Source of the DNA: Octopus sinensis
Taxonomy: Eukaryota
Direction of reading: 5' to 3'
DNA length: 64,000 nucleotides
NCBI RefSeq assembly: GCF_006345805.1
Contig: NC_043004.1
Span: 52,948,001-53,012,000 of the forward strand
The notes under the pieces are model-generated. The model searched no databases. It was not told the origin of the DNA and saw only the letters and a list, made by a program, of their open reading frames with translations. Each line of letters starts with the position of its first letter. The first letter of the stretch is position 1. Made by a program: the position numbers and the translations under genes. Positions 4,994 to 62,630 of this stretch are shown here, in pieces.

Positions 4994-6218
4994 CGCGTGA
5001 TCTGATCAATAAGTATCCGGACTCTTGCCATAGTAACGAAGCTAAAGCATGGAGAAAAAAGCTGCTTGGCACAGATGTTCTCGCTCACTTCCGCTGTTTA
5101 CAGCAGTGCTTGAAAGGAACGTGTGTAGCGTGCGATTGTCGCATTGAGAATGACAGAGAAAGTTGAGCAGAGAATCTGCATCAAAGTTTGCCAAAAGCTT
5201 GGCAATACCTACTCAGAGGCCTACGCAAATTTGCAGAAAGTGTATGGAGAGGAGCGTATGAGCCGCATGCAAGTATACGAGTGATTCGAACGTTTCTAAG
5301 ATGGCCTAAAAAATGTCGTTAGTGACCAACTCTCTGGGAGACACGAGACCAGCAGAACTGAGAAAATCATCGCAAAGTACGGGCAGTTGTGAGGGGAAAT
5401 CGTCGAATCACCATCCGTAACTAATCTGTACAAAGGATGTGCAGATTAGTTAGGTTTAATTCAGTCCATCATCAAATTTGAGTATGAGACGCGTGTCTGC
5501 CAAGTTTCTGCCAAAACTGCTTTCAGCTGATGAGAAAAAACTCGGGTTTCAGCTGTACAAGTTTTCTTTGATTGTGTAACGAACAATGAAAACTTTTTGA
5601 AAACGGTCATGACGGGTGATGTTCGTGGGTCTATGGCTTTATCCCCGAAAAAAGGCTCAGTTTTTGCAGTGGAAGACCCTAACCATTCATGAGAGGAAGC
5701 AATGTGAAGGCACTGTTGACCGTTTTCTTCGACTACAAGGGGATTGTTCATTATCAGTATGGTCCACGTCCAAACAAGGATACTATCATAATGCTTTGCG
5801 GCGTTTACGGCATGCTATTCATCGGAAAAGTCCATAGTTGCATGCATCTGACAACGTACCTGCGCATTCCACGTAGCTTGTGCAGCAGACTTTAGCTAGG
5901 AAGGGCATTCGCGAGATCTGACAGCTACTGTTTTCCGCAGATCTTGCTCCTTGCGACTTTTTCCTCTTTCCAAATTTTAAATCGCGCTTGAAAGGAAGAT
6001 TTCAGAACGTCTTGGAAATCGAGGTGAATACGATGAGGCAGCTGCTGATTATCCCAGAAAACGTGCTCCAGGAATGCTTCCGTCAAAGGAAACAACGCTG
6101 GATCAGGCGTGTATCTTCTGAAGGCGACTAATTTGAAGGTGATTAAATGCCAATTTAGTACGAATTGTAGTTTTGTTTTTATAGCACCAGTCCGGATACT
6201 TATTGATCAGACTTCGTA
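4994..6218 (+). mobile_element. Defective mariner (DD34D-type) transposon, ~1.2 kb
   Basis: Perfect 23-bp TIR TCTGATCAATAAGTATCCGGACT (5001-5023) and its complement (6189-6211). Broken transposase pieces on +: MTEKVEQRICIKVCQKLG, VMTGD, DNVPAH, DLAPCDFFLFP..KSRLKG. Confidence 0.9.
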
Positions 6219-6909
6219 TATTATTGAGACAGGAAAAGAAAGGAAGAGAGAATTAAAGAAAGAACGAAATAGACAAAGAGACAAAGATCATGTTACACCT
6301 CGTTTCCTAGATGTGTAATACTCATGAAACACTTAAATCTGTCAGTATTTTGCACCTTGGGCAAATAGGCACTTCTTAAAAATGGTACCGAGGCTTTTTT
6401 CCGTTTCGAAACTCCGTACTACTTATCTTGGCTATAGAGTTTTTTCCAACCTGTGTATCCCTCTTACCATATAACGTTATGTCACGTCACTTGTACAAAG
6501 TTCTATCATTGTAATTACTTTTAGCCCTGCAGATCATGCCCAGACAATCCGGACACAAAAGAAATTACAGTTTTCATATGATAGATTTTATAACATTACC
6601 ATTCATAACTTCCGTTTGAAGTGCAACTTTTTCCTGAATCCTGTGATTACAGCTGATTCCCATTGAGTCAAGGATACAGGAAGGTGGTAAATAATTATAT
6701 ACCTATCTATATTCTACCGATGAAATAGGATATTTTTTGTGCCCGTAGATTGCTATTATTGTCTAATTTTTGATTAACTAGTTTTTACATGAACCGTTTT
6801 CTAGAACGATTCCCTTTTTTACTGAGAAAATTATTTCTTAATGAAAGTATGATTTGGAATATTGATAAATGTCCTTAATTAGTGTCAATAGCAGAGATAA
6901 GTGTACGGT

Positions 6910-7380
6910 GGGGAGTTGGTAGAATCTTTAGCCGGGTAAAAAGCTTAGCGGTATTTCGTCTGCCGCTACGTTCTGAGTTCAAATTCCGCCGAGGTTGACT
7001 TTGACTTTCATCCATTCAGGGTCGATTAAATAAGCACCAGTTACGCACTGGGGTCGCTGTAATCGACTTAATCCCTTTGTCTGTCCTTGTTTGTCCCCTC
7101 TATGTTTAGCCCCTTGTGGGTAGTAAAGAAATTGGTATTTCGTCTATCCTTACGTTTTGAGTTCAAATCCCCCGAGGTCGTTTTGACTTTTCTCATTTCA
7201 TGGTCAGTAAAATAGTACCACTGGGACACTGGGATCAATATAATGGACTTACACCTACAATTACTTTGTATTTCATAATTTCGAGAGTCGATAAAGTAAG
7301 TACCAGTAAAATACCAGGGTCATTGTACACAACTTAACCTTCCCCTGAAATTGCTAGCCTTATGCTAAAATTAAAGATAA
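6910..7380 (+). mobile_element. tRNA-derived SINE family 2 copy (6910-7135) followed by degenerate tandem partial copies
   Basis: B-box-like GAGTTCAAATTCC; body matches copies at 50241-50459, 50565-50735 and 62411-62630. Confidence 0.8.
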
Positions 7381-15516: not shown

Positions 15517-15715
15517 ACACGCACACACACACACACACGCACACACACACACAAGCACACACGACGGGTTCTTACAGATTATGTCTACTAATTCCACCCA
15601 GAAAACTTTGGTAGGCCCGAGGCTCCAGTAGAAGATACTTGATCAAGACAAGACGCAGTGGGACTGAACCAGAATCGATGTGGTTGGGAAGCAAGCTTCT
15701 TAACACACATTCGTA
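15275..15715 (-). mobile_element. Old SINE family 1 copy
   Basis: Degenerate match to 39213-39600 (GTCATTTGACT..GGCCATGCTGGA, GGGACTGAACC, GTGGTTGGGAAGCAAGCTTCTTAAC). Confidence 0.7.
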
Positions 15716-32236: not shown

Positions 32237-32630
32237 AGGCGCAGGAGTGGCTGTGTGGTAAGTAGCTTGTTTCCCAACCACATGGTTCCGGGTTCATTCC
32301 CACTGCGTAGCACCTTGGGCAAGTGTCTTCTACTATATCCTCGGGCCGACCAAAGCCTTGTGAGTGGATTTGCTAGACGGAAACTGAAAGAAGCCCGTCG
32401 TATATATGTATATATATGTATGTGCGTGTATGTTTGTGTATCTGTGTTTGTCCCCCAAGCATTGCTTGACAACCAATGTTGGTGTGTTTATGTCCCCGTT
32501 ACTAAGCGGTTCGGCAAAAGAGACCGATAGAATAAGTACTGGGCTTACAAAAGAATAAGTCCCGGTGTCGAGTTGCTCGATTAAAGGCGGTGCTCCAGTA
32601 TGGCCGCAGTCAAAATGACTGAAACAAGTA
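32237..32630 (+). mobile_element. tRNA-derived SINE family 1, full length
   Basis: AGGCGCAGGAGTGGCTGTGTGG (A box), GGTTCATTCC (B box), CCTTGGGCAAG core-like block, A-rich tail. Confidence 0.9.
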
Positions 32631-32638
32631 AAAAAAAA

Positions 32639-37300: not shown

Positions 37301-37479
37301 ATATGCATATGTGGGTATTGGACGTCACGAACTTCGAGTATATGAACTATTCTTTCGAACAACGAAAGACCCAAATGAAAAATGAAACAAACAACATAAA
37401 GAACGACCCTTCATCATTTGTTGGCTGTTTTCAGTTCTCGTATTTCGAGCGTGTATAATATATACACACATATATATAT

Positions 37480-37941
37480 ATATACACATACGTATACACA
37501 CACACATACATATATATATACACATACGTATACACACACACACATACATATATATATACACATACGTATACACACACACACATACATATATATACACACT
37601 ACGTATACACACACACACATACATATATATATACACATACGTATACACACACACACATACATATATATATACACATACGTATACACACACACACATACAT
37701 ATATATATACACATACGTATACACACACACACATACATATATATATACACATACGTATACACACACACACATACATATATATATACACATACGTATACAC
37801 ACACACACATACATATATATATACACATACGTATAACACACACACATACATATATATAACACATACGTATACACACACACACATACTATATATATACACA
37901 TACGTATACACACACACACATACATATATAATACACATACG

Positions 37942-37960
<19 letters not shown>
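37480..37960. repeat. ~38-bp minisatellite (CATACGTATACACACACACACATACATATATATATACA), ~13 copies
   Basis: Regular recurrence of ACGTATAC; explains the long pseudo-ORFs at 37325-38124. Confidence 0.9.
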
Positions 37961-38011
<51 letters not shown>

Positions 38012-39212: not shown

Positions 39213-39600
39213 AGGCGCAGGAGTAGGCTGTGTGGTAAGTAGCTTGCTTACCAACCACATGGTTCCGTGTTCAGTCCCACTGCGTGGCACCTTGGGCAAG
39301 TGTCTTCTACTATAGCCTCGGGTCGACCAAAGCCTTGTGAGTGGATTTGGTAGAGGGAAACTGAAAGAAGCCCGTCGTATATATGTATATATATATGTAT
39401 GTGCGTGTATGTTTGTGTATCTGTGTTTGTCCCCCAAGCATTGCTTGACAACCAATGTTGGTGTGTTTATGTCCCCGTTACTAAGCGGTTCGGCAAAAGA
39501 GACCGATAGAATAAGTCCCGGGATCGATTTGCTCGACTAAAGGCGGTGCCCCAGCATGGCCGCAGTCAAATGACTGAAACAAGTAAAAGCGTAAAAGAGA
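39213..39600 (+). mobile_element. tRNA-derived SINE family 1, full length (uninterrupted reference for the split copy)
   Basis: AGGCGCAGGAGTAGGCTGTGTGGTAAGTAGCTTGCTTACCAACCACATGG...GTTCAGTCCC...; A-rich tail. Confidence 0.9.
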
Positions 39601-39815
39601 GTTATAAAGTAAAAAAAAAAACAATACCAACAATATTTTCTAAAAATGCAAGAATCACCCTACGTACAGAGTTGAAAGAAAATAGTAAGCAAAATCAAAT
39701 CACCAGAAACCACAGCCACGGGAGTATTTAGAAACAGAATCACCAGAATAAACACCACAAATATCAGGATTGCTGTTATATACAGCCACATCAACAAGCC
39801 GTAGGTTGATATCTA

Positions 39816-40261: not shown

Positions 40262-40642
40262 CTCTCTCTTTTTACTCTTTTACTTGTTTCAGTCATTTGA
40301 CTGCGGCCATGCTGGAGCACCGCCTTTAGTCGAGCAAATCGACCCCGGGACTTATTCTTTGTAAGCCTAGTACTTATTCTATCGGCCTCTTTTGCCGAAC
40401 CGCTAAGTGACGGGGACGTAAACACACCAGCATCGGTTGTCAAGCAATGCTAGGGGGACAAACACAGACACGCAAACACACACGCACTTACATATATATA
40501 TATACATATATACGACAGGCTTCTTTTCAGTTTTCCGTCTACCAAATCCATTCACAAGGCTTTGGTCGGCAGGAGACACTTGCCCAAGATGCTACGCAGT
40601 GTGACTGAACCCGGAACCATGTGGTTGGTTAGCAAGCTACTT
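40262..40642 (-). mobile_element. 3' portion of a split SINE family 1 copy
   Basis: Matches the reverse complement of 39238-39600 from AAGTAGCTTGCT onward; its 5' head is at 46326-46363. Confidence 0.9.
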
Positions 40643-42816
40643 TATTTCAAAACATTTGCCATAAAGGCAGTACACAGATTAAGTTAGCTTTGCGGGCTGG
40701 ACGAGGACATTAATGAAGTGAATGATAATGAAAGAAAGATGATAAGGATGGGAGAAGACAAAAAGCGCCCGCCGACTTTCGCTTCTCTAAAACATTGTTC
40801 TTTTTAAAGATAAACACAAAACGAGGTATTAAACCTCTTACAATTTTTCCAATTTTTAGACTTAGCAGTCCATTATTAATAAAAATAAACACAAAACGAG
40901 GTATTAAACCTCTTACAATTTTTCAATTTTTGGACTTAGCAGTCCATTACTAATAATAACAGTTCAATAAATTACATATCGTCCTCGAAATCGCTTGTGA
41001 CCGCGCCCTCCACCATCAACCACGCCTCCCTCAGAACGTAATCAAGTTCCGAGTCAGCGTCGCCCGGGACCAAGCTCCTTTAGCCCAAGCGTCACGTCGA
41101 ACGCCACGGCCTCCACAGCTACCTGCGGAGGCCATTCGGGGTCCTGTGTGAAGGCTAAAGGTGCTCCCTTGTGGTGCTCTTCCATCACTTTTTCAATTTC
41201 TCCTCCTCTATAGAAGAGGACCAATACGTTCAGTTCTTTCGTTGGCGGCACAGTTCCCGCCAACGGTATTCCTTCTCTTGTCGGTGGCACAACCCCAACC
41301 GACGTAGTTCCGGGACATTCCGGTGCTACACTGACAGCCGGTAATGTCCCGTTTTTCTTCCTCTTTTTCTTTTTTCTTCCCTTTTCAACTGAGGGACGGT
41401 GCGTCTCCTCCGTGGCTGGAAGATTTGCCTTCCTCTCCTCATCCCTATTATCCTTTGGTGAGCACCCATTGTTGCTCACCTTCCTCTTTCGGCCTCTGTT
41501 TGAGGAGTCCTCTGCTTTCTCGGCCGTTATCATTCCCTCTTCTAGAGGGGTTTTGCTTAACTGTTCCGGGATCCTATTTTGTTCCCGGGGACAGTTCTTT
41601 ATGTGGCCGGACTCCAAGCACCGATGACAGTTAGGGGGACGACCCTCAAGCATCACCGGGTACCTGCACCCGGCCATTTAAAAAATCTGGAAGAACCAGA
41701 TTGGCTGATTGGGTCCACAGGGTCAGAATTGCTTTTGACCCAACCCAAGCAGCCGCAGGAAGAACTTTTACATTAAGGAGCTTAGTTTCGCTGCCACCCA
41801 GACCCCGGCGGATAGTCTCCTCTATCCACTCGGGTTCTATGTCGGGTGGCAGCCCGCAAATCCAAGCTTTCATCAATTTCTTTTTTTTGTACGTGGGCAG
41901 GAATAAGATTCCCTTACCCTCCAGGGGTTTGCTAGCAAATTTGCAAGCCTCTTCAGGGGTGTCAAATAGCAACCGCACCGTTGCATATTTGACACCCCTG
42001 GAAATGAATTTAATTGTTGGCAAATACTCTTCCAACTCCTTTTCAATTACCGTCTTTTCGAATAGGGCGATGGTGTCGAGTGCCTTGGAGTAGGTTCTCA
42101 ACACCACCGTCCTATCTTCACGGTTTTTTAACCACTTTTTAGGCGGTATGATCTCCCATTCCAAAAGCTTGTTATTTTTCATTGCCATGTTTTTTTTTGT
42201 TTTTTGTTTTTTTTTTAAATGTATTCAGAATAAAACTAAAAAACGAGAAGAAAAGGAAATCCGAAGAAAGTCACAGTGAAAAAGGGAGAGAGTCAAATAA
42301 AGTTAAAGAGAAAGTCAAATAAAGTTAAAAAGAAAGTCAATAACACAGCAAAAACCTTCTGGCCATTTGGTACTCCCGGCCTAAATTGAACCAGGAACGC
42401 ACAACTTCCACAAAAATTGGTGTAAAATTGGTAAAAATTGTTCAAACTCGGAGGCAAAATACTCCCCTATATAGCAGTTTTCACAATTCATAAAAGTTCT
42501 TCACAGCACAATACAATTCTCACAATTACGTGAAAAAAATATTCACTCAATTTATCGAAGATGGATACGCCCCCCAAAAATTTTCTCAGCGAGAAAAATA
42601 TATTTGCCACATGTCGGCAGAATCAGAATTCTGAATCCAGTAGGACTTCCTGCTTGTAAAAAACAATTCTCAACAAAAACTCCCACTGGACCCAGAAAAC
42701 AGAATCTTACCTTACATGGGGCTTCCAAAGTTTTCAATTCAAGACGGCTTCAAAAGCACGTCTTCACCGCTTCAGTGCCAAACACAACACTGACTCGCAC
42801 ATGCGCAGAAGCAACT
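40643..42816 (-). mobile_element. ORF1-only retroelement A (2174 bp)
   Basis: Bounded by 15-bp duplications; ~630-bp 5' UTR, one frameshifted ORF1, ~410-bp 3' UTR ending in hairpin + AATAAA. Confidence 0.85.
41054..42188 (-). pseudogene. L1/Tx1-type ORF1 nucleic-acid-binding protein, element A; frameshift near 41680
   Basis: ORFs 41646-42188 and 41054-41677 join into one homolog of the B protein; EGRPPNCHRCLESGHIKNC knuckle is one residue short (CX2CX4HX3C); basic tail. Confidence 0.75.
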
Positions 42817-42831
42817 GTTAGCAAGCTACTT

Positions 42832-44804
42832 TATTTTATATAATTTGCCACTAGGGCAGCACACAGAGTAGTAGCTACGGGCTGGACAAGGACATTAATG
42901 GATCATGGTGGTGGTGGATGAAGATGGTGATGGGAGAAGTCGAAAGCGCCCGCCGACTTTCGCTTCTCTAAAACAATGTTTCAATAAATACATTTAATAA
43001 AATGTTCAAAAAATGTTCAACAATTCTTCTCGTCAGATTCCCGAAGCAAATTGTCTTGCCGCCTGCAGACAACTCTGCGACGACAAGTTGGGGCCTGCAA
43101 AGAGAAAGGTAAAGTCTTTCTTTTCAAAGGTCTCTGCGACCCTTGACAAAGTATCTTCTGTTACTTTTTCCGCAGCTACCCGCGGAGGCCATAACGGACT
43201 CCTTGAGCCGACCGTGCCCTTACGCTCTCGGTCACCCAAGCCATTCAAGAATCTTTCAACCTCCTCTCCCTTGTGGTAAAGGAGGAGAAGCATCTCCTCT
43301 TCACAGGGAGGGACCTCACACTGCCCCGTCGGTGGCACACTTCCTACTGGCGGAGCCTTGTCCGCGGGTGGCACACATCCCACCCGCGGCTCCGTCGGCG
43401 ACACAGAAACGTCAGTCGTCCGACCTCTCCTTTTTCTCCTCCTTCTTTTGGGGGACACTGCTGACCCAGGGGACTCCGTCACCAGACACGGGGGATTGCT
43501 ATCCCCCTTCGCCCCCTGAGCGTTCCTTGGCGGGCAACCATTGTTGCTCGCCTTTCTCTTTCTTTTCGTGGAGGCAACCTCCTCCACGACTTCCATCGTC
43601 TCCCCCTCCAATGAGGGGGCGGCGGGCGCCTTTTCCCCTCTCTGCTCCGGGGCACCACCACGGCCCCTGGGACAATTCTTCCTGATATGTCCGGGCTTCA
43701 GGCACAGGTGACACTTGGGGGGGGCCACCCTCGAGTATCACCGGGTACCTGTGCCCAGCCATTCTCAGGAAGTCCGGGAATTTCATTTCTCCCACGGCTA
43801 CCGGTGTCCACAGGGTCAAAGTTGCCCTCGACCCCTGCCAGGCGACCGCGGGAGCCACCTTCACACTCAGCAGTCTGGGTCCGCTATCCCCCAGGCCTCG
43901 CCGGATGGTCTTCTCGATCCATTCCGCCTCCGTGCCCGGGGGCAGCCCACACACCCAGGCTCTTTTCACTTTTCTGCCACAATACGAGGGGAGGAACAAA
44001 ATTTCCTCTCCCTCCAGTGGCTCCCTAGCAAATCTGCTAGCTTCCTCGGGGGTACCAAACAGCAACCACACCGTTGCAAATTTAGTCCCCCGAGAAATAA
44101 ATTTTATAGTTGGCAGGTATTCCCCCAACTCTTTCTCTATAGTATTCCTGTCGAAGAGGGCAATGGCTCCACGCGACCTAGAATAGGTTCGTAGGACCAC
44201 CGTCCTCTTCTCAAGACTTTCAATCCACTGCTTGGGTGGGACGACCTCCCATTTCAAAGCGGTGGTTTCTTTTGTTGCCATGTTTTTTTTGTTTTTTTTT
44301 ATAAATAAATGTATTTAGAATAAAACTAAAAAACGAGAAGAAAAGGAAATCCGAAGAAAGTCACAATGAAAAAGGAGAGAGTCAAATAAAGTTGAAAGGA
44401 AATTCAAATAAAGTTAAAAAGAAAGTCAAAAACACAGCAAAATCCTTTTGGCCATTTGGTACTCCCGGCCTAAATCGAACCAGGATCGCACAACTTCCAC
44501 AAAAATTGGTGTAAAATTGGTAGTTCTTCACAGCACCATACAATTTTCACAATTCGAAGACGGATACGCCCCCAAAAATTTTCTCAGCGAGAAAAATATA
44601 TCTGCCACATGTCGGCAGAATCAGAATTCTGAATCCAGTAGGACTTCCTGCATGTAAAAAATATTTCTCAACAAAAACTCCCACTGGACCCAGAAAACAG
44701 AATATTACCTTACATGGGGCTTCCAAAGTTTCAATTCAAGACGGCTTCAAAAGCACATCTTCACTGCTTCAGTAGCAAACACAACACTGACTCGCACATG
44801 CGCA
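42832..44804 (-). mobile_element. ORF1-only retroelement B (1973 bp)
   Basis: Bounded by 15-bp duplications; 5' UTR nearly identical to A; single ORF; shares 3' UTR blocks with A. Confidence 0.85.
43033..44281 (-). CDS. L1/Tx1-type ORF1 protein, element B (~415 aa if one extra base in the G8 run at 43717-43724 is an error)
   Basis: Removing one base gives ...LEGGPPKCHLCLKPGHIRKNCP (canonical CX2CX4HX4C) in frame with the MATKE... N-terminus. Confidence 0.75.
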
Positions 44805-44819
44805 GTTAGCAAGCTACTT

Positions 44820-46325
44820 TATTTCAACTATTTTGCCATAAAGGCATTACATAGAGGGGACACTACAAAAACATGTGGAGACATATAACAATTAAAAATA
44901 AAATGATACTGTGAGTGACATGAAAATGAACGTGAGAAAATAAATTAAGTTTATGATAACATGCATGATATCTGAAAATGAAATATGAAATATGACGAGT
45001 GTGCTACTCACCCCACTCTGAGCAACACCACTCGCTGCCTTTGAGTCTGAATTCTTCTCTAATCTCTGGTCTAGTCCTTCTTTTTCCACTCTCGCTATCG
45101 CTTAAAGACAACTTTCTTTCGCAACCTTTTTCACCGGGGGAGGGGTTTTCTGAATTCTGTGGTGTCTGCTCTTTTTTCTTTTTCTTTTTTTCTTGTGGGG
45201 AAAGGGAGTGGGTGGGTCTGGTGTCTGTATGGGGCGGGTGGGTCTGAGTGGTCTTGGGTGGGATGGAGTTGGACTGGGGTACCATTTCACACTCAGTGTT
45301 CTTTCTTTTCTTCCTCTTCTTACTTCTGCTCTCTGCTACTATCCATTCTACCTCCTTTCGTCCGTCTTTGTCTTCGTCCTCTTTTTTCTTCTTTGTCTCC
45401 GCAACTGGTTCATCTATTTTTTCCTCTTTTTCTTCTGTAGGGGGCAGTGTGCTCTTTTTCTTCTGTAGGGGGCAGTGTGCTCTAATGTGGCCTTTTTGGC
45501 CACATTTAAAGCACCACGGGGTTCTGCCTTCTACCCATACTCTCAGTACCATTTCTCCCACTGACACCGTTTCCGCCAAATTTTCCAGCTCCTTCGCCTC
45601 CACTTGTATGGTCATTTCCAGTAATTTTCCTTTGTAACTTCTTTCCTCTGTCTCTGTGGCTTGGAGGACAGTCACCTCCTCACTTCCAACGAGGACGGCT
45701 GCCGCAATCCAAGCCACCTTTATGTCAGGTGGAATTCCTTCTACCCTCACCTTAGAATTTTTTCTTCCAAGATAAGAGGGTAGAAGCACCAGTTCCTCAG
45801 CTTTTACGGTTGCACTTGCCAGCCTTCTCGCCTCCTCCTCTGTTTTAAACTGGACAACCACCGTCCCATATCCGCTTCCGTTTGCTATGTATGTTACTTC
45901 GTTCGAAAGCCCCTTGAGAGCTTTTTCTATTTTTTCCATATTCATCTGCTCCACTCTCCTACTCTCCACTGAGTGCACCTTGTAGGTGATGGTTTTTCTT
46001 TCCATATTCACCATGACCGTTTTCGGGGGTAGTAACTTTACGTCACTTCCCACCTTCTGTGTCATCTTATACAGCTCCTTCAGTTCAGTCAGGTCCACTT
46101 CCTTTCTCTTCACTCCCGCCGCGTCAGCAAAACTCTTCATTTTCTCCAAATGTTGGTCCATCCTGTTCACCGCCTTAACGAGCTCCTCCTCAGATGTGAA
46201 CAGTTCGTACTCGCTAAGGTCCGAATACATTATTTTCCACTCGCCAACAAACCGCTGGCGAGCAGCTCAAAGGATTCTGTCCGCCTAGTCAAAACTTGAC
46301 ACAGTAAACAACTCGACGCATGCGC
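44820..46325 (-). mobile_element. ORF1-only retroelement C (1506 bp)
   Basis: Bounded by 15-bp duplications; ~95-bp 5' UTR, intact ORF, ~185-bp 3' UTR with the same terminal hairpin + AATAAA. Confidence 0.85.
45004..46230 (-). CDS. Intact 408-aa L1/Tx1-type ORF1 (helical N-terminus, RRM-like region, CCHC knuckle, acidic/basic tail)
   Basis: VEGRTPWCFKCGQKGHIRAHC knuckle; GTVVVQFKTEEEA and LPSYLGRK..VRVEGIPP align with A/B (ATV.LLF.TPEEA, LPSYCGRK..AWVCGLPP). Confidence 0.85.
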   Translation of the reverse strand: MYSDLSEYELFTSEEELVKAVNRMDQHLEKMKSFADAAGVKRKEVDLTELKELYKMTQKVGSDVKLLPPKTVMVNMERKTITYKVHSVESRRVEQMNMEKIEKALKGLSNEVTYIANGSGYGTVVVQFKTEEEARRLASATVKAEELVLLPSYLGRKNSKVRVEGIPPDIKVAWIAAAVLVGSEEVTVLQATETEERSYKGKLLEMTIQVEAKELENLAETVSVGEMVLRVWVEGRTPWCFKCGQKGHIRAHCPLQKKKSTLPPTEEKEEKIDEPVAETKKKKEDEDKDGRKEVEWIVAESRSKKRKKRKNTECEMVPQSNSIPPKTTQTHPPHTDTRPTHSLSPQEKKKKKKEQTPQNSENPSPGEKGCERKLSLSDSESGKRRTRPEIREEFRLKGSEWCCSEWGE

Positions 46326-46363
46326 GTTAGCAAGCTACTTACCACACAGCCACTCCTGCGCCT
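46326..46363 (-). mobile_element. 5' head (A box) of the split SINE family 1 copy
   Basis: Minus strand AGGCGCAGGAGTGGCTGTGTGGT-AAGTAGCTTGCTAAC. Confidence 0.9.
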
Positions 46364-49569: not shown

Positions 49570-50459
49570 GAAAGGAGGGGGAAGTCCATTACAATGACCC
49601 CAGTACATGAGTGGTATTTATTTTATCGACTCTGAAAGGATGAAACCATAGTTGAAGCGGAATTTGAACTTAGAACGTAAAGGAAGACGAAATGCCTTTA
49701 AGCATAATATTTGGTATACTAACGATTATGCCTGCTCGCCACCTATATAACAAATTATTTTCTGTTACAAGCATAAGGCCTAAAATTATGTGTGGACGTG
49801 GTTAAGCGATTATATCGACTTAAGTAGTAAACTGGTACTTATTCCATCGACCCACGCAATGATGAAAGCAAACGCGACATCGGAGGAATTCAAAACCAAA
49901 GCGTAAGACGGACGAAATATCGCTAAAAAGTTTTGTCCACCATTCTAAAATTTCTACCAGCATGCCACCGCTTTACGCTAACAAAAAATAAAGGTTTCAA
50001 ATTTTGCCACAAGTGCAGCAACTTTGAGGAAAGGGATGAGTCAATTAAATCGATCCCAATGTTCAACTGGTACTTATTTTATCGACCCGAAAAGGATGAA
50101 AGGTAAAGTTGACCTCAGTGGAATTTCAACACGAAGGTAGCGGCGGGCGAATTCCTACTAAGCATTTCGTCTGGCGCTCTAACGATTCTGCCAGCTCGCC
50201 GTCTTTCGCTAACAAATAATAGTAAGGGGCAATCAGAAACATATTCCTTTCTACTCTAGACACAGGGCCCGAAATTTTGTGGGAGGAGCCAGTCGATTAG
50301 ATCGACCCCGATATGCAACTGGTACTTAATTTATCGGCCCCGAAAGGATGAAAGGCAAAGTCGACCTCAGCGGAATTTCAATTCAGAACATAAAGACAGA
50401 CGAAATACAGCTAAGCATTTCGCCCGGCTTGCTAACGGTTCTGCCAGCTCGCCGCCCTA
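49570..50459 (-). mobile_element. Four head-to-tail SINE family 2 copies; the last (50241-50459) has an 11-bp TSD CAATCAGAAAC
   Basis: Repeated ATCGAC..ACTGGTACTTA..GAAAGGATGAAA..GGAATTT.AAC..GACGAAAT..CCAGCTCGCC; TSD at 50230-50240 and 50460-50470. Confidence 0.8.
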
Positions 50460-56579: not shown

Positions 56580-59500
56580 TTGTCCTTATGCAGTCACACA
56601 CAAACACATACTCAAGTACCCACGAATACACCTACTCCCAACACACCACACACACACAACGTACATGCACATGTACGCACACATACTTCCACACCTATAC
56701 ACCCCCCCACGCGCACACACACACACACCAAGGACAATACTCATACAGATACGCACACTCCTATAAACACCTAGCTGATACGCACAGATACACGCACGAA
56801 AGCACACACACGCACACAATCACGCGCATGTATGTTACGCCCACACAACTCCAAACCCCCCCACACGCATACATTCACACACACACATACATACGTACAC
56901 ACACATAATACATACATAGATACATTCATACATACATACATACACACACACGCATACATACATACATACATTCATACATACATACATACACACACACATA
57001 CATACCCACACATACATATACTTACACACATAAACACACACACACACACATACCCACACACACACGCACGCACACATACATATACACACATACATACATA
57101 CATACACACACGTACATACATACATACATACATACACACATACATACACACATACACACACAGACACAAATATACATACACACACATACACACACATACG
57201 CATACACACATACACACATACACACACATACACACATACACACACATACATATACATACATACATACACACACATACACACATACACGAATACATACATA
57301 CATACACACACACATACACACATACATAGATACATACACACATACACACACACATACATATATATAAATACACACACACACATACATATACACACATACG
57401 TACACACACATACACACACATACACGCATGCACACATACATACATATATACACATACATACATACACATACATACGCACATACACACACACACTTACATA
57501 CATACATACACACACACACATACATACACACATACACACATACATACACACACATACACACACATACATACATAAATACACACATACTTACATACACACA
57601 CGCATACATATACATACATACACACACACACACATACACACCTACACACATACATACACACACACAAACATACACACATATATACATAGACACATATATA
57701 CATACACACACATATACATACACATACATTCATACAGACACACACCTGCACACATACACGCATGTACATATACATACATACACATACATACACACACACA
57801 TACATACTATACACACATACACATACACACATACATACACAAACGCGTACATATACATACATACACAAACACATACACACACACACTTACAAACATACAC
57901 CCGTACATACATACATACACACACACATACACACACATACACACACATACATACCTGCTTACACACATACACACATACATACATATACACAAACGCATAC
58001 ATATACATACACACATACACACATACATACATACACACACATACATACACACATACATACATAGACGCATATATACATACACACACACATGCATATACAT
58101 ACATACAGACACACACATGCACACATACACGCATGCACACATACATACATACACATACATACACACACACACATACATACTATACACACATACACATACA
58201 CACATACATACATACACACACGCTTACATATACATACATACATACATATACACATACACACACACACTTACACACATACACCCGTACATACATACATACA
58301 CACACACATACACACACATACATACATACATACTTACACACATACACACATACATATACACACACGCATACATATACATACACACACATACGCACATACA
58401 TACATATATACACACATACATACCCACATACATACATAGATACATACATACACAAACATACATATACATACGTACATACATACACACATACACACACACA
58501 TACACACACACGCACGCACACATACATACATACACACATACATACACACACACGAACATACATACATACACATATACACACTTACACACATACACATACA
58601 TACACACATACATACGCACATACATACACACACATATACACACATACACACACACACACATACACACACATATATATACATACATACACACACACCTACA
58701 CACATACACGAATGTACACATACATACATGCATACACACACATACATACACTACATACATAGATACATACATACATACACACACACATACATATACATAC
58801 ATACGTACACACACGCACATACACATATACACGCATGCATAAATACATACATACACACATACGTACATACATACATACACACACTTACACACATACACAC
58901 ACACATACATACATACGTACGTACATACATACATACACACACATACATACACACACATACATACATACATACATACATACACACATACACACATACACAC
59001 ACACACACACATACACACATACACACACACACACATACACACACACCTACACACATACACGAATGTACACATACATACATGCATACACACACATACATAC
59101 ACTACATACATAGATACATACATACATACACACACACATACATATACATACATACGTACACACACGCACATACACATATCCACGCATGCATAAATACATA
59201 CATACACACATACGTACATACATACATACACACACTTACACACATACACACACACATACATACATACGTACGTACATACATACATACACACACATACATA
59301 CACACACATACATACTTACATACATACACACATACACATACTCATACACTCATACATACACACACGCATACATACACACATACACACATACACACACACA
59401 TACACACATACATACATACACACACGCATACATATACATATATACATACATACACATACACACACATACACACATACGCACATACATACATACACACATA

Positions 59501-60145
59501 TAAACATATAAACACACATATAAGCCTCTACTGTGTACACACACGCACACATATATATACATACATTCACTCGCACGCACGTACACACACACACATACAC
59601 ATGTACATATATATACTATACACGCACACACACATACACACGTACAAACACACACAAACTCACATATACACCGACAGATATACATACACAATATACACCT
59701 ATCCGCGCACGCACACATACACATAAACACAGACAAACGCACACATACACGCACACACTTACACGTACATACATACACACTCACACAAATGAACCCACAC
59801 ATACATCCCTACACACACACACGCACGTACAAGCACACACGCACACATACACTAGGTTAAGCAGTTACTCGCCACACACCTACACTCTACGCATACACAC
59901 ACGAACACACACATGCACACACACACACATGATACATATACTTACACGCACACACATATATACCCCTTTGTTTTCTGACCTGGCTTTGACCTGTCTGGAT
60001 ACAAACAAGCTAGCTGTCATAAAGGAGTGCCTTATGACAGCTAACTTGCCATGCTTTATTCACCATACATACACACACACACACACACGCACGCACAAAC
60101 ACACTTGTCATCCTTGCACCCACACACACGCACCCACACACATTC
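56580..60145. repeat. ~3.5-kb compound (CA)/(TACA)/(CATA) tract with internal higher-order duplications
   Basis: Block containing ACGAATGTAC recurs at ~58708 and ~59059; source of all His/Thr- and Cys/Val-rich pseudo-ORFs. Confidence 0.95.
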
Positions 60146-62410: not shown

Positions 62411-62630
62411 ATTTCTTTGCTACCTACAAGGGGCTAAACACAGAGAGGACAGACAAGGAGATTAAGTCGATTACATCGACCCCAGTGTGTAACTGGTACT
62501 TAATTTATCGACCCCGAAAGGATGTAAGGCAAAGTCGACCTCGGCGGAATTTGAACTGAGAACGTAACGGCAGACGAAATACGGCTACGCATTTCGTCCG
62601 GCGTGCTAACGTTTCTGCCAGCTCGCCGCT
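62411..62630 (-). mobile_element. Full-length SINE family 2 with 11-bp TSD GTATAATACGT
   Basis: TSD at 62400-62410 and 62631-62641; B box GAGTTCAAATTCC-like. Confidence 0.9.

What the first reader, a model, noticed from the sequence alone, without database searches (positions are those of the whole stretch)
40262..46363. Three ORF1-only retroelements stacked at one site inside a SINE's tRNA-like head
Seen: a family-1 SINE is split 23 bp from its 5' end, just after the A box. Between the halves lie three same-orientation inserts (A 40643-42816, B 42832-44804, C 44820-46325), each bounded by the identical SINE 15-mer GTTAGCAAGCTACTT (four copies). Each insert has a single ORF with an L1/Tx1-type ORF1 layout and no RT, endonuclease, integrase or LTR. 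A/B and C are only distantly related proteins, so this is not simple tandem duplication. Known: Tx1-clade LINEs include sequence-specific families (e.g. Dewa at tRNA arrays, Keno at U2 snRNA), and HAL1 elements are ORF1-only L1 derivatives. Inference: at least two families of non-autonomous ORF1-only elements are mobilised in trans by a Tx1-like enzyme that targets this SINE. The ~15-bp duplication and the implied nick at CTT/ACC (a TT/A step) fit TPRT. Because each insertion regenerates the target, insertions stack. A hyper-abundant SINE would be a renewable, low-cost landing pad. I do not know of this combination being described.
Basis: partly seen in the sequence, partly recalled or inferred. 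Interest (0 to 1): 0.9.

Follow-up and report, generated by a model that had tools for sequence, protein, structure and literature searches.

The report
ORF1-only retroelements stacked in SINE head
Three small retroelements that encode only an RNA-binding protein and no reverse transcriptase have landed one after another at exactly the same base inside one octopus SINE; relatives in another octopus genome also sit in SINE heads, so these look like dependent parasites that home to another parasite.

Summary
A minus-strand SINE is split 23 nt from its 5' end by three same-orientation inserts (A, B, C). The exact 15-mer AAGTAGCTTGCTAAC (sense strand) occurs four times. Removing the inserts restores a collinear SINE.

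All four 15-mers carry a base not seen in the four other SINE copies examined. They are therefore most likely duplications of this site, not sequence carried by the elements.

Each insert has a 5' UTR, one ORF and a shared ~35-nt 3' tail. The ORF is intact in C; in A and B it is broken once, in a homopolymer. The protein is a helix, two RRMs and a CCHC knuckle. There is no RT, endonuclease, LTR or TIR.

In Octopus sinensis, an A/B-type copy has its 5' junction at the same SINE position. A complete C-type copy with a 19-bp duplication sits in the head of a different SINE.

ORFs evolved under purifying selection (dN/dS 0.13-0.29).

Best reading: site-specific, trans-mobilised, HAL1-like non-autonomous LINE derivatives inserted by target-primed reverse transcription. 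The Tx1 partner is inferred, not shown, because no octopus genome could be searched. It is a new variant of known kinds and moderately to highly interesting.

The parts
46341..46363 (-). SINE head: first 22-23 nt, AGGCGCAGGAGTGGCTGTGTGGT, containing an A-box-like TGGCTGTGTGG
   Evidence: Alignment with intact SINE copies; motif hits
46326..46340 (-). Target-site duplication copy 4 (sense AAGTAGCTTGCTAAC), next to the SINE head
   Evidence: D11
44820..46325 (-). Element C, 1506 bp. 5' end GCGCATGCGTCGAG. Intact ORF 45004-46230 (408 aa): N-terminal helix, two RRMs, CCHC. 3' tail ...TGCCTTTATGGCAAAATAGTTGAAATA. Exact 28-bp tandem duplication inside the ORF at 45424-45479.
   Evidence: (D18)
44805..44819 (-). 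Target-site duplication copy 3
42832..44804 (-). Element B, 1973 bp. 5' end TGCGCATGTGCGAG. ORF in two pieces, 43499-44281 and 43033-43728, with a frameshift in the C8/G8 run at 43715-43725. 3' tail ...TGCCCTAGTGGCAAATTATATAAAATA.
42817..42831 (-). Target-site duplication copy 2
40643..42816 (-). Element A, 2174 bp. 8 extra 5' nt (AGTTGCTT), then CTGCGCATGTGCGAG. 628-nt 5' UTR, 94.5% identical to B's. ORF in two pieces, 41646-42188 and 41054-41677, with a frameshift in the T6 run near 41680. 75-bp tandem duplication in the 3' UTR, about 40798-40959. 3' tail ...TGCCTTTATGGCAAATGTTTTGAAATA.
   Evidence: (D10, D13)
40628..40642 (-). Target-site duplication copy 1, contiguous with the SINE body
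40262..40627 (-). SINE body: B-box-like GGTTCCGGGTTCAG, central (TG/TA) region and 3' part

Best explanation
**What it is.** Three independent insertions of non-autonomous non-LTR retroelements. Each has a 5' UTR, one ORF1-type gene and a short 3' UTR. The gene encodes a helix, two RRMs and a CCHC knuckle. The 3' UTR ends in a conserved ~35-nt tail.

**How it inserts (inferred).** The elements are copied into DNA by target-primed reverse transcription, using the endonuclease and reverse transcriptase of an autonomous LINE supplied in trans. That enzyme would:
- recognise the shared 3' tail (stringent-type recognition; there is no poly(A) at the junctions);
- nick the bottom strand of the SINE head just after the A-box-like TGG(T);
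- make the second nick 15 bp away (19 bp in the second SINE family).

Each insertion is therefore flanked by a copy of the target. The head-proximal copy keeps both sides of the first-nick site, so it can be hit again and insertions stack.

**Shown:** the anatomy, the local origin of the duplications, recurrence of the site in another genome, absence of RT/EN, and coding constraint on the ORF.

**Inferred:** the mechanism (TPRT in trans), the identity of the partner (a Tx1-type LINE is the best guess) and the order of insertion (C last).
For: - Four exact 15-mers bound three different elements.
- The joined flanks give an intact SINE.
- All four 15-mers share a variant absent from the four other SINE copies examined.
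- A, B, C and the O. sinensis element share the 3' tail, which includes a 4-bp hairpin with one compensatory change.
- The 5' ends start at the same element position. Only A has extra nucleotides, as is usual for TPRT 5' junctions.
- L002 has the same SINE and the same 5' junction base.
- L001 is a complete 1.6-kb ORF1-only element in the head of a second SINE. Its 19-bp duplication differs only by one CpG->TpG change. The unoccupied consensus is seen at window 62599-62617.
- The AF2 model shows a helix + tandem RRMs + CCHC. The best structural matches are HuR/Sxl tandem RRMs. This is the type I ORF1p layout (PMC5203782).
- dN/dS is 0.13-0.29 with saturated synonymous sites.
- 15-19-bp duplications fit APE-type LINEs, not integrases or DDE transposases (established knowledge).
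- O. vulgaris has 13 recently active L1-Tx1 families, and SINEs make up 11.6% of its genome (PMC13282606).
- Tx1-clade elements are known to target other repeats (PMC4494074).
Against: - No partner LINE with the same tail was found, because no octopus genome could be searched.
- Only three independent loci (five insertions) support the site preference.
- The two SINE targets share little sequence around the nick (roughly TGG(T)|(A/C)AG.A), so one sequence-specific endonuclease does not obviously explain both.
- L002 lacks its 3' half, so only one junction there is informative.
- Three hits in one copy of a SINE that fills about a tenth of the genome is unexpected unless copy numbers are high or this copy is favoured.
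- The array has not been checked against reads.
Confidence: 0.65

Rival explanations
1. Targeting works by tethering rather than by a sequence-specific endonuclease. The integration machinery is drawn to SINE heads by the pol III apparatus (TFIIIC/TFIIIB on the A/B boxes, or the opened early-transcribed region), as with the Dictyostelium TRE elements or Ty3. The elements themselves are still ORF1-only TPRT passengers.
For: - Two SINE families with unrelated sequence are both hit in the head, in the sense orientation, just after the A-box-like TGG, at 13 and 23 nt from the SINE start.
- There is little shared sequence at the two nick sites.
Against: - Four insertions from two element families in SINE 1 share the junction to the base (window x3 and L002). 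Tethered systems usually give a spread of positions outside the gene.
- The distance from nick to B box differs greatly between the two SINEs.
- Neither head is recognisable as a tRNA.
Confidence: 0.15
2. The 15-mer is not a target duplication. It is carried on the element RNA by read-through: the AATAAA signal spans each element/15-mer junction. The array would then arise by template switching between such RNAs, or by recombination, in one or few events.
For: - AATAAA is formed across every GAAATA|AAG junction, so transcripts should extend into the downstream 15-mer.
- A and B share a 94.5% identical 5' UTR despite 54-68% identical ORFs, which shows that exchange between elements does occur.
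Against: - All four 15-mers carry this SINE copy's own variant, not the consensus.
- The O. sinensis C-type element is flanked by a different duplication taken from a different SINE.
- There is no poly(A) or flank beyond the 15-mer between elements.
- The upstream-most 15-mer is contiguous with the SINE head.
Confidence: 0.08
3. Assembly artefact: separate single insertions in different SINE copies were mis-joined into an apparent stack.
For: - The region is highly repetitive.
- The A and B frameshifts lie in homopolymers, which suggests an error-prone assembly.
Against: - Adjacent elements share only the 15-mer and a ~35-nt tail, too little to mis-join long reads.
- A mis-join through SINE sequence would leave SINE body or head between elements, and none is present.
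- The three units are distinct sequences.
Confidence: 0.05
4. The elements are internally deleted or otherwise degenerate fragments with no life of their own. They would be dead-on-arrival copies of full-length LINEs that happen to have lost ORF2, not self-propagating ORF1-only lineages.
For: The autonomous relative is unknown, and independent ORF2 loss is known to occur (HAL1 arose several times; PMC5753468).
Against: - Four complete copies from three or more deeply diverged lineages (A, B, C, L001) all have the same ORF1-only architecture with defined 5' and 3' ends.
- ORFs are intact or one frameshift from intact.
- dN/dS is 0.13-0.29 between lineages.
Confidence: 0.07

Closest known systems
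HAL1 (half-L1) elements of mammals
   Same: Non-autonomous LINE derivatives that keep the 5' UTR, ORF1 and 3' end, encode only ORF1p and depend on a LINE's ORF2p. They arose repeatedly (PMC5753468).
   Different: - HAL1 ORF1p is the Transposase_22 (type II) protein. Here it is tandem RRM + CCHC with no Transposase_22 hit.
- HAL1 is poly(A)-tailed and inserts without site specificity. These elements have a specific tail, no poly(A) and a fixed target.
Target-specific Tx1-clade LINEs (Tx1L in the Tx1D piggyBac MITE, Tx1-Mar in Mariner-N4, Keno in U2 snRNA genes, Kibi/Koshi in microsatellites, Dewa in the tRNA-Leu spacer)
   Same: - Precise insertion into multicopy sequences, including other transposable elements.
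- RRM/CCHC-type ORF1.
- APE-type TPRT with target duplications (PMC4494074, PMC3706591, PMC5203782).
   Different: - Those are autonomous, with ORF2 APE+RT. The elements here have no ORF2.
- No Tx1 RT could be linked to them.
- In the papers searched I found no report of a SINE head as target.
SINE/LINE partnerships of the stringent type (shared 3' tail recognised by the LINE RT)
   Same: A conserved 3' tail is shared across otherwise unrelated passengers (A/B vs C), and there is no poly(A) at the junction.
   Different: These passengers are 1.5-2.2 kb. They probably use a pol II-type 5' end (a GCGCATGCG motif at position 1; the NRF1-like reading is from memory). They encode a protein that is under selection.
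tRNA-gene-targeting retroelements that use pol III factors (Dictyostelium TRE5/TRE3, yeast Ty3)
   Same: Association with pol III promoter-bearing units and a fixed orientation relative to them.
   Different: Those elements insert upstream or downstream of the gene at a distance set by TFIIIB/TFIIIC. Here insertion is inside the unit, at one base.

Membership tests
Non-LTR retroelement inserted by TPRT (APE type) | Flanking target-site duplication of variable, roughly 7-20 bp length derived from the local site | tested here: met
   15 bp, four copies, with a site-private variant. 19 bp in L001, with one CpG->TpG difference.
Non-LTR retroelement inserted by TPRT (APE type) | Defined 3' end, variable or extended 5' junction, no terminal repeats | tested here: met
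   Shared tail ending in GAAATA. A has 8 extra 5' nt. No LTR or TIR in the repeat finder.
Non-autonomous (trans-mobilised) element | Lacks reverse transcriptase and endonuclease | tested here: met
   Pfam finds only weak RRM_3 and zf-CCHC. The 3' UTRs are 185-410 nt, leaving no room for ORF2.
Non-autonomous (trans-mobilised) element | An autonomous LINE with the same 3' tail exists in the same genome | not testable with these tools
   No octopus genome is searchable. There is no RT in the window. The tail pattern was absent from JGI metagenomes.
Type I LINE ORF1p (Khazina & Weichenrieder classes) | At least one RRM followed by a CCHC zinc knuckle | tested here: met
   AF2 model with pLDDT 72.5: two RRM folds (residues ~80-235), then the CCHC. 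Foldseek top hits are HuR/Sxl tandem RRMs at E 1e-4. zf-CCHC found in 12 of 20 relatives.
Tx1 clade | RT/APE phylogeny places the element (or its partner) in Tx1 | not testable with these tools
   No RT is available. The type I ORF1 layout also occurs in plant L1 and the Jockey superfamily (PMC5203782), so the layout alone does not assign the clade.
Tx1 clade | Sequence-specific insertion into a multicopy target | tested here: met
   Five insertions at three loci, all in SINE heads and all in sense orientation. Four share the same base of SINE 1. The sample is small.
HAL1 | ORF1 of the L1 Transposase_22 type; L1-derived 5' and 3' ends with a poly(A) tail | tested here: not met
   No Transposase_22 hit and no poly(A) at the junctions. 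It works like HAL1 but is not a member.
tRNA-derived SINE (the target) | Head recognisable as a tRNA | tested here: inconclusive
   A-/B-box-like motifs are visible, but ARAGORN finds none and Rfam has no tRNA hit at E<=10 on the isolated heads.
DNA transposons targeting small-RNA genes (Dada) | Terminal inverted repeats, DDE transposase, short TSD | tested here: not met
   No TIRs, no transposase, and the TSD is 15-19 bp.

The most novel reading that the evidence does not exclude
Octopus genomes harbour a guild of protein-coding, RT-less retroelements. Several anciently diverged ORF1-only lineages have been kept under purifying selection, and they use the 5' heads of hyper-abundant SINEs as dedicated landing pads. 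Tail variant and target SINE co-vary: the GGCAAA...GAAATA tail goes with SINE 1 and the GGATAAATAAAGAAAT tail with SINE 2. That would imply more than one site-specific LINE enzyme specialised on different SINE families. The result would be a three-tier parasitism (LINE, SINE, ORF1-only hitch-hiker) in which the target is regenerated and insertions stack.
Probability: 0.35. Interest if true: 0.75.

Novelty: new variant of a known kind. Interest (0 to 1): 0.62.

Why it matters
**If confirmed genome-wide, this would add two things.**
- A SINE head would be a new class of safe-haven target for site-specific retroelements.
- It would be an invertebrate, non-L1 counterpart of HAL1 in which ORF1 alone has been conserved across deeply diverged lineages. 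That bears on what ORF1p does for an RNA that must borrow someone else's ORF2p.

**Practical consequences.**
- The system offers a compact tail-plus-target pair for dissecting how a LINE enzyme recognises both RNA and DNA.
- Such nested arrays also affect repeat annotation in cephalopod genomes. SINEs and LINEs together make up about a quarter of the O. vulgaris assembly, and most SINE families there are unclassified (PMC13282606).

Tried and rejected
- **Homologue searches.** The three word-indexed searches returned only 6 proteins. The third, an alignment of 20 sequences, was swamped by low-complexity words. As a result the O. vulgaris, O. sinensis and Argonauta homologues seen in the exhaustive HMMER search could not be looked up on their contigs.
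- **Exact look-ups.** C, the A and B ORF pieces, P0001, P0003, P0005 and P0056 were not on record. No independent assembly of the array was obtained.
- **Metagenome scans.** The tail pattern gave 0 hits. The protein-pattern scan gave a copia-like polyprotein (L003, RVT_2) and a short knuckle match (L004). Both are zinc-knuckle false leads.
- **Long homologues** (up to 1135 aa) were checked for APE/RT fusions and none was found. One is a Helitron gene model that has swallowed an ORF1 fragment. Another is a C2H2 zinc-finger chimera.
- **Apparent extra ORF1 copies** at the ends of L002 are C2H2 zinc-finger exons matched by that chimera.
- **PDB sequence search** found only retroviral and cellular zinc knuckles.
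- **Fold search** did not return L1 ORF1p among the 50 matches listed.
- **Shared motif between the two targets.** GCTAAC / GTTAGC occurs in both, but in opposite orientation relative to the element, and it is absent from the L002 target. I treat it as coincidence.
- **The TT/A nick rule** does not hold for the second SINE.
Full report
**What is in the sequence.**

The 15-mer GTTAGCAAGCTACTT occurs four times exactly on the + strand, at 40628, 42817, 44805 and 46326. Only 0.12 matches are expected by chance even with two mismatches allowed (family D11).

The interrupted repeat is a SINE on the minus strand. Its first 22-23 nt (AGGCGCAGGAGTGGCTGTGTGGT) lie at 46363-46341. The rest lies at 40627-40262. 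Joining head, one 15-mer and body gives a sequence collinear with two uninterrupted copies in the same window, at 39213-39601 and 32237-32633.

All four 15-mers read ...GCTAAC. The four other copies examined read GCTTAC, GTTTCC and GCTTCC and, in a diverged copy at 15687-15701, AAGAAGCTTGCTTCC. The four 15-mers are therefore copies of this locus's own target, not sequence imported with the elements.

ARAGORN and Rfam do not recognise the head as a tRNA. The A-/B-box reading rests on motifs seen by eye.

**The three inserts.**

All three are in the SINE's orientation.

| Element | Window coordinates | Length | ORF state |
|---|---|---|---|
| C | 44820-46325 | 1506 bp | Intact, 408 aa (45004-46230) |
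| B | 42832-44804 | 1973 bp | One frameshift in a C8/G8 run |
| A | 40643-42816 | 2174 bp | One frameshift in a T6 run |

The frameshifts in A and B may be mutations or assembly errors.

The proteins are homologous. The shared core is RG.KYGTV...LLP.YLGRK...GIPPDI..WI, followed by a CCHC knuckle. A/B and C are only 23-29% identical.

Pfam gives only weak RRM_3 and zf-CCHC hits. It finds no RT, endonuclease, integrase or Transposase_22.

An AlphaFold model of C residues 1-262 (mean pLDDT 72.5) shows an N-terminal helix, two RRM folds and the knuckle. Its best structural matches are tandem-RRM proteins such as HuR and Sxl. RRM(s) plus CCHC is the type I ORF1p layout. That layout occurs in Tx1 and plant L1, but also in the Jockey superfamily (PMC5203782). 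It therefore identifies a LINE ORF1-like protein, not a clade.

There are no LTRs or TIRs.

The elements share a ~35-nt 3' tail, C(T)GTGTA.TGCCTTTATGGCAAA..TTGAAATA. It contains a 4-bp hairpin. There is no poly(A).

They begin with (C)TGCGCATG(T/C)G. A carries 8 extra 5' nucleotides.

An AATAAA signal is completed across each GAAATA|AAG junction.

**Related loci.**

The protein family is large: 911 representatives at E<=0.001. The named close relatives come from Octopus sinensis, O. vulgaris, O. bimaculoides and Argonauta hians. The window is therefore from an octopus.

Only two genomic loci could be fetched, both from O. sinensis.

- **L002.** An A/B-type element (ORF 77% identical to A at the nucleotide level). 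Its 5' end abuts the same SINE at the same base...GGTAAGTAGCTTGCTTCC|TGTGCATGCG. Its 3' half is lost.
- **L001.** A complete 1.6-kb C-type element (5458-7055). It has a single 384-aa ORF and a related tail. It sits in the head of a different SINE family, 13 nt from that SINE's start and in the SINE's orientation. It is flanked by CAGAAACGTTAGCACGCCG / CAGAAATGTTAGCACGCCG. An unoccupied copy in the window (62599-62617) shows that the C form is the original, so the duplication is 19 bp with one CpG-to-TpG change.

In total, five insertions at three independent loci all lie in SINE heads, in sense orientation. Four of them are at one base of SINE 1.

A rough chance estimate uses three figures: SINEs cover 11.6% of the O. 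vulgaris genome (PMC13282606), the head is about a tenth of a SINE, and there are two orientations. A random insertion would land like this about 0.6% of the time. This is my estimate from those numbers, not a tool result.

Other SINE heads in the window and in L001 are empty, so occupancy is low.

**Evolutionary signals.**

Between lineages, dN/dS is 0.13-0.29 with synonymous sites saturated (pS ~0.7). The ORF has been under coding constraint throughout the divergence of A, B, the L002 element, C and the L001 element.

A and B are a mosaic.

| Comparison | 5' UTR identity | ORF identity | 3' UTR identity |
|---|---|---|---|
| A vs B | 94.5% | 54-68% | 63% |
| A vs L002 element | 59% | 77% (RRM half), 62% (C-terminal part) | not available |

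The L002 element is closer to A in its ORF than B is, yet its 5' UTR is much less similar. The 5' UTR of A and B was therefore exchanged recently. This happened either by gene conversion between neighbours in the array or by modular recombination before insertion.

**Mechanism.**

The best-supported reading is repeated target-primed reverse transcription of ORF1-only, non-autonomous LINE derivatives by an enzyme supplied in trans. The supporting features are:
- duplications of 15-19 bp;
- a fixed 3' end and a slightly variable 5' junction;
- no terminal repeats;
- a LINE-type ORF1.

These fit an APE-type LINE mechanism and exclude integrase or DDE transposition (established knowledge).

The shared tail without poly(A) points to stringent recognition of the RNA 3' end.

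In SINE 1 the implied first nick (bottom strand) is ...GCTACTT^ACCACA, just after the A-box-like TGG. In SINE 2 it is ...GTTTCTG^CCAGC.

After one insertion, only the head-proximal 15-mer keeps both sides of the first-nick site. Later insertions should then enter there. That would make C, the only copy with an intact ORF, the youngest. This order is an inference.

That the partner is a Tx1-clade LINE is plausible but not shown. The points in its favour are:
- Tx1 elements are known for targeting other repeats (Tx1D, Mariner-N4, U2, microsatellites; PMC4494074; Dewa at the tRNA-Leu spacer; PMC3706591);
- L1-Tx1 families are recently active in O. vulgaris (PMC13282606);
- among the LINE groups listed as active there, it is the one expected to have this ORF1 type (my knowledge).

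**Rivals.**

- **Tethering to the pol III machinery.** This would explain why two unrelated SINE heads are hit. It fits poorly with base-exact junctions.
- **The 15-mer is carried on read-through RNA.** This is contradicted by the site-private variant and by the different duplication in L001.
- **Mis-assembly.** This is unlikely because adjacent units share only ~50 nt. It still needs reads to exclude.
- **Dead deletion derivatives rather than propagating lineages.** This is hard to square with four complete, similarly built copies from deeply diverged lineages under purifying selection.

**Comparison and novelty.**

Functionally these elements resemble HAL1, the ORF1p-only L1 derivative that arose repeatedly in mammals (PMC5753468). 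They fail HAL1's defining features: Transposase_22 ORF1, poly(A) tail and non-specific insertion.

In target behaviour they resemble site-specific Tx1-clade LINEs, but they lack ORF2.

I found no paper describing SINE-head-specific or ORF1-only site-specific elements in cephalopods. Repbase itself could not be consulted.

I rate this a new variant of known kinds. Confidence in the anatomy is good. Confidence in site specificity is moderate. Confidence in the partner is low.

**Limits.**

No octopus genome could be searched. Copy numbers, the full flank table, the autonomous partner and read support are all missing.

Noticed in passing
window 42189-42816 vs 44282-44804 (5' UTRs of A and B): The neighbouring elements A and B have 94.5% identical 5' UTRs. 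Their ORFs are only 54-68% identical and their 3' UTRs 63%. The switch falls at the start codon. An O. sinensis relative with a closer ORF has an unrelated 5' UTR. This suggests recent gene conversion between neighbours or modular 5' UTR swapping.
   Followed up: partly
window 45424-45479: An exact 28-bp tandem duplication lies inside C's ORF, just after the CCHC knuckle. The two copies are translated in different frames (HCPLQKKKS / TLPPTEEKE). With a single copy the frame would stop after the knuckle. With two copies the ORF continues into a C-terminal region that matches homologue P0005.
   Followed up: partly
window 40798-40959: A 75-bp tandem duplication (two copies, ~90-94% identical) in the 3' UTR of element A. 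Each copy contains a small hairpin (GAGGTTTAATACCTC).
   Followed up: no
window 39213-39601 (+) and 40262-40642 (-): An intact SINE 1 copy lies head-to-head with the body of the interrupted SINE. Together they form a ~380-bp inverted repeat, 84-97% complementary, separated by ~660 bp.
   Followed up: no
window 40643, 42832, 44820 (element 3' ends): A poly(A) signal AATAAA is completed only across the element/target junction (GAAATA|AAG). Transcripts of inserted copies should therefore end in or beyond the downstream 15-mer.
   Followed up: no
window 42802-42816, 44791-44804, 46312-46325; L002 5490-5503 and 7530-7545: Element 5' ends start with a GCGCATGCG-like palindrome, which resembles an NRF1-type site (from memory). 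A similar GCGCGCATGCGCAG lies in an unrelated ~415-bp repeat in L002 (7503-7916, and 9662-10067 at 94% identity).
   Followed up: no
window 50401-50456 and 62575-62630 (-); also 49731-50203: Unoccupied copies of the second SINE family, the one that hosts the element in O. sinensis locus L001. Both target families are therefore present in this window.
   Followed up: partly
window 37464-37971 and 56863-59852: A 38-bp minisatellite (13.6 copies, 96% matches) and a ~3-kb degenerate (ACAT/CA)n array. The long 'ORFs' listed at 55-60 kb fall in the latter and have no Pfam hits.
   Followed up: partly
L002 5-789 and 12525-12842: The O. sinensis A/B-type copy lies between exons or copies of a C2H2 zinc-finger gene cluster. 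One database protein (P0033) is a chimeric gene model that joins ORF1-like and C2H2 parts.
   Followed up: partly
P0056 (database protein, 1135 aa): A gene model with Helitron_like_N and PIF1 helicase domains that contains a 160-aa segment 50% identical to element C's protein. It is probably an ORF1-only element inserted in, or mis-annotated with, a Helitron.
   Followed up: no
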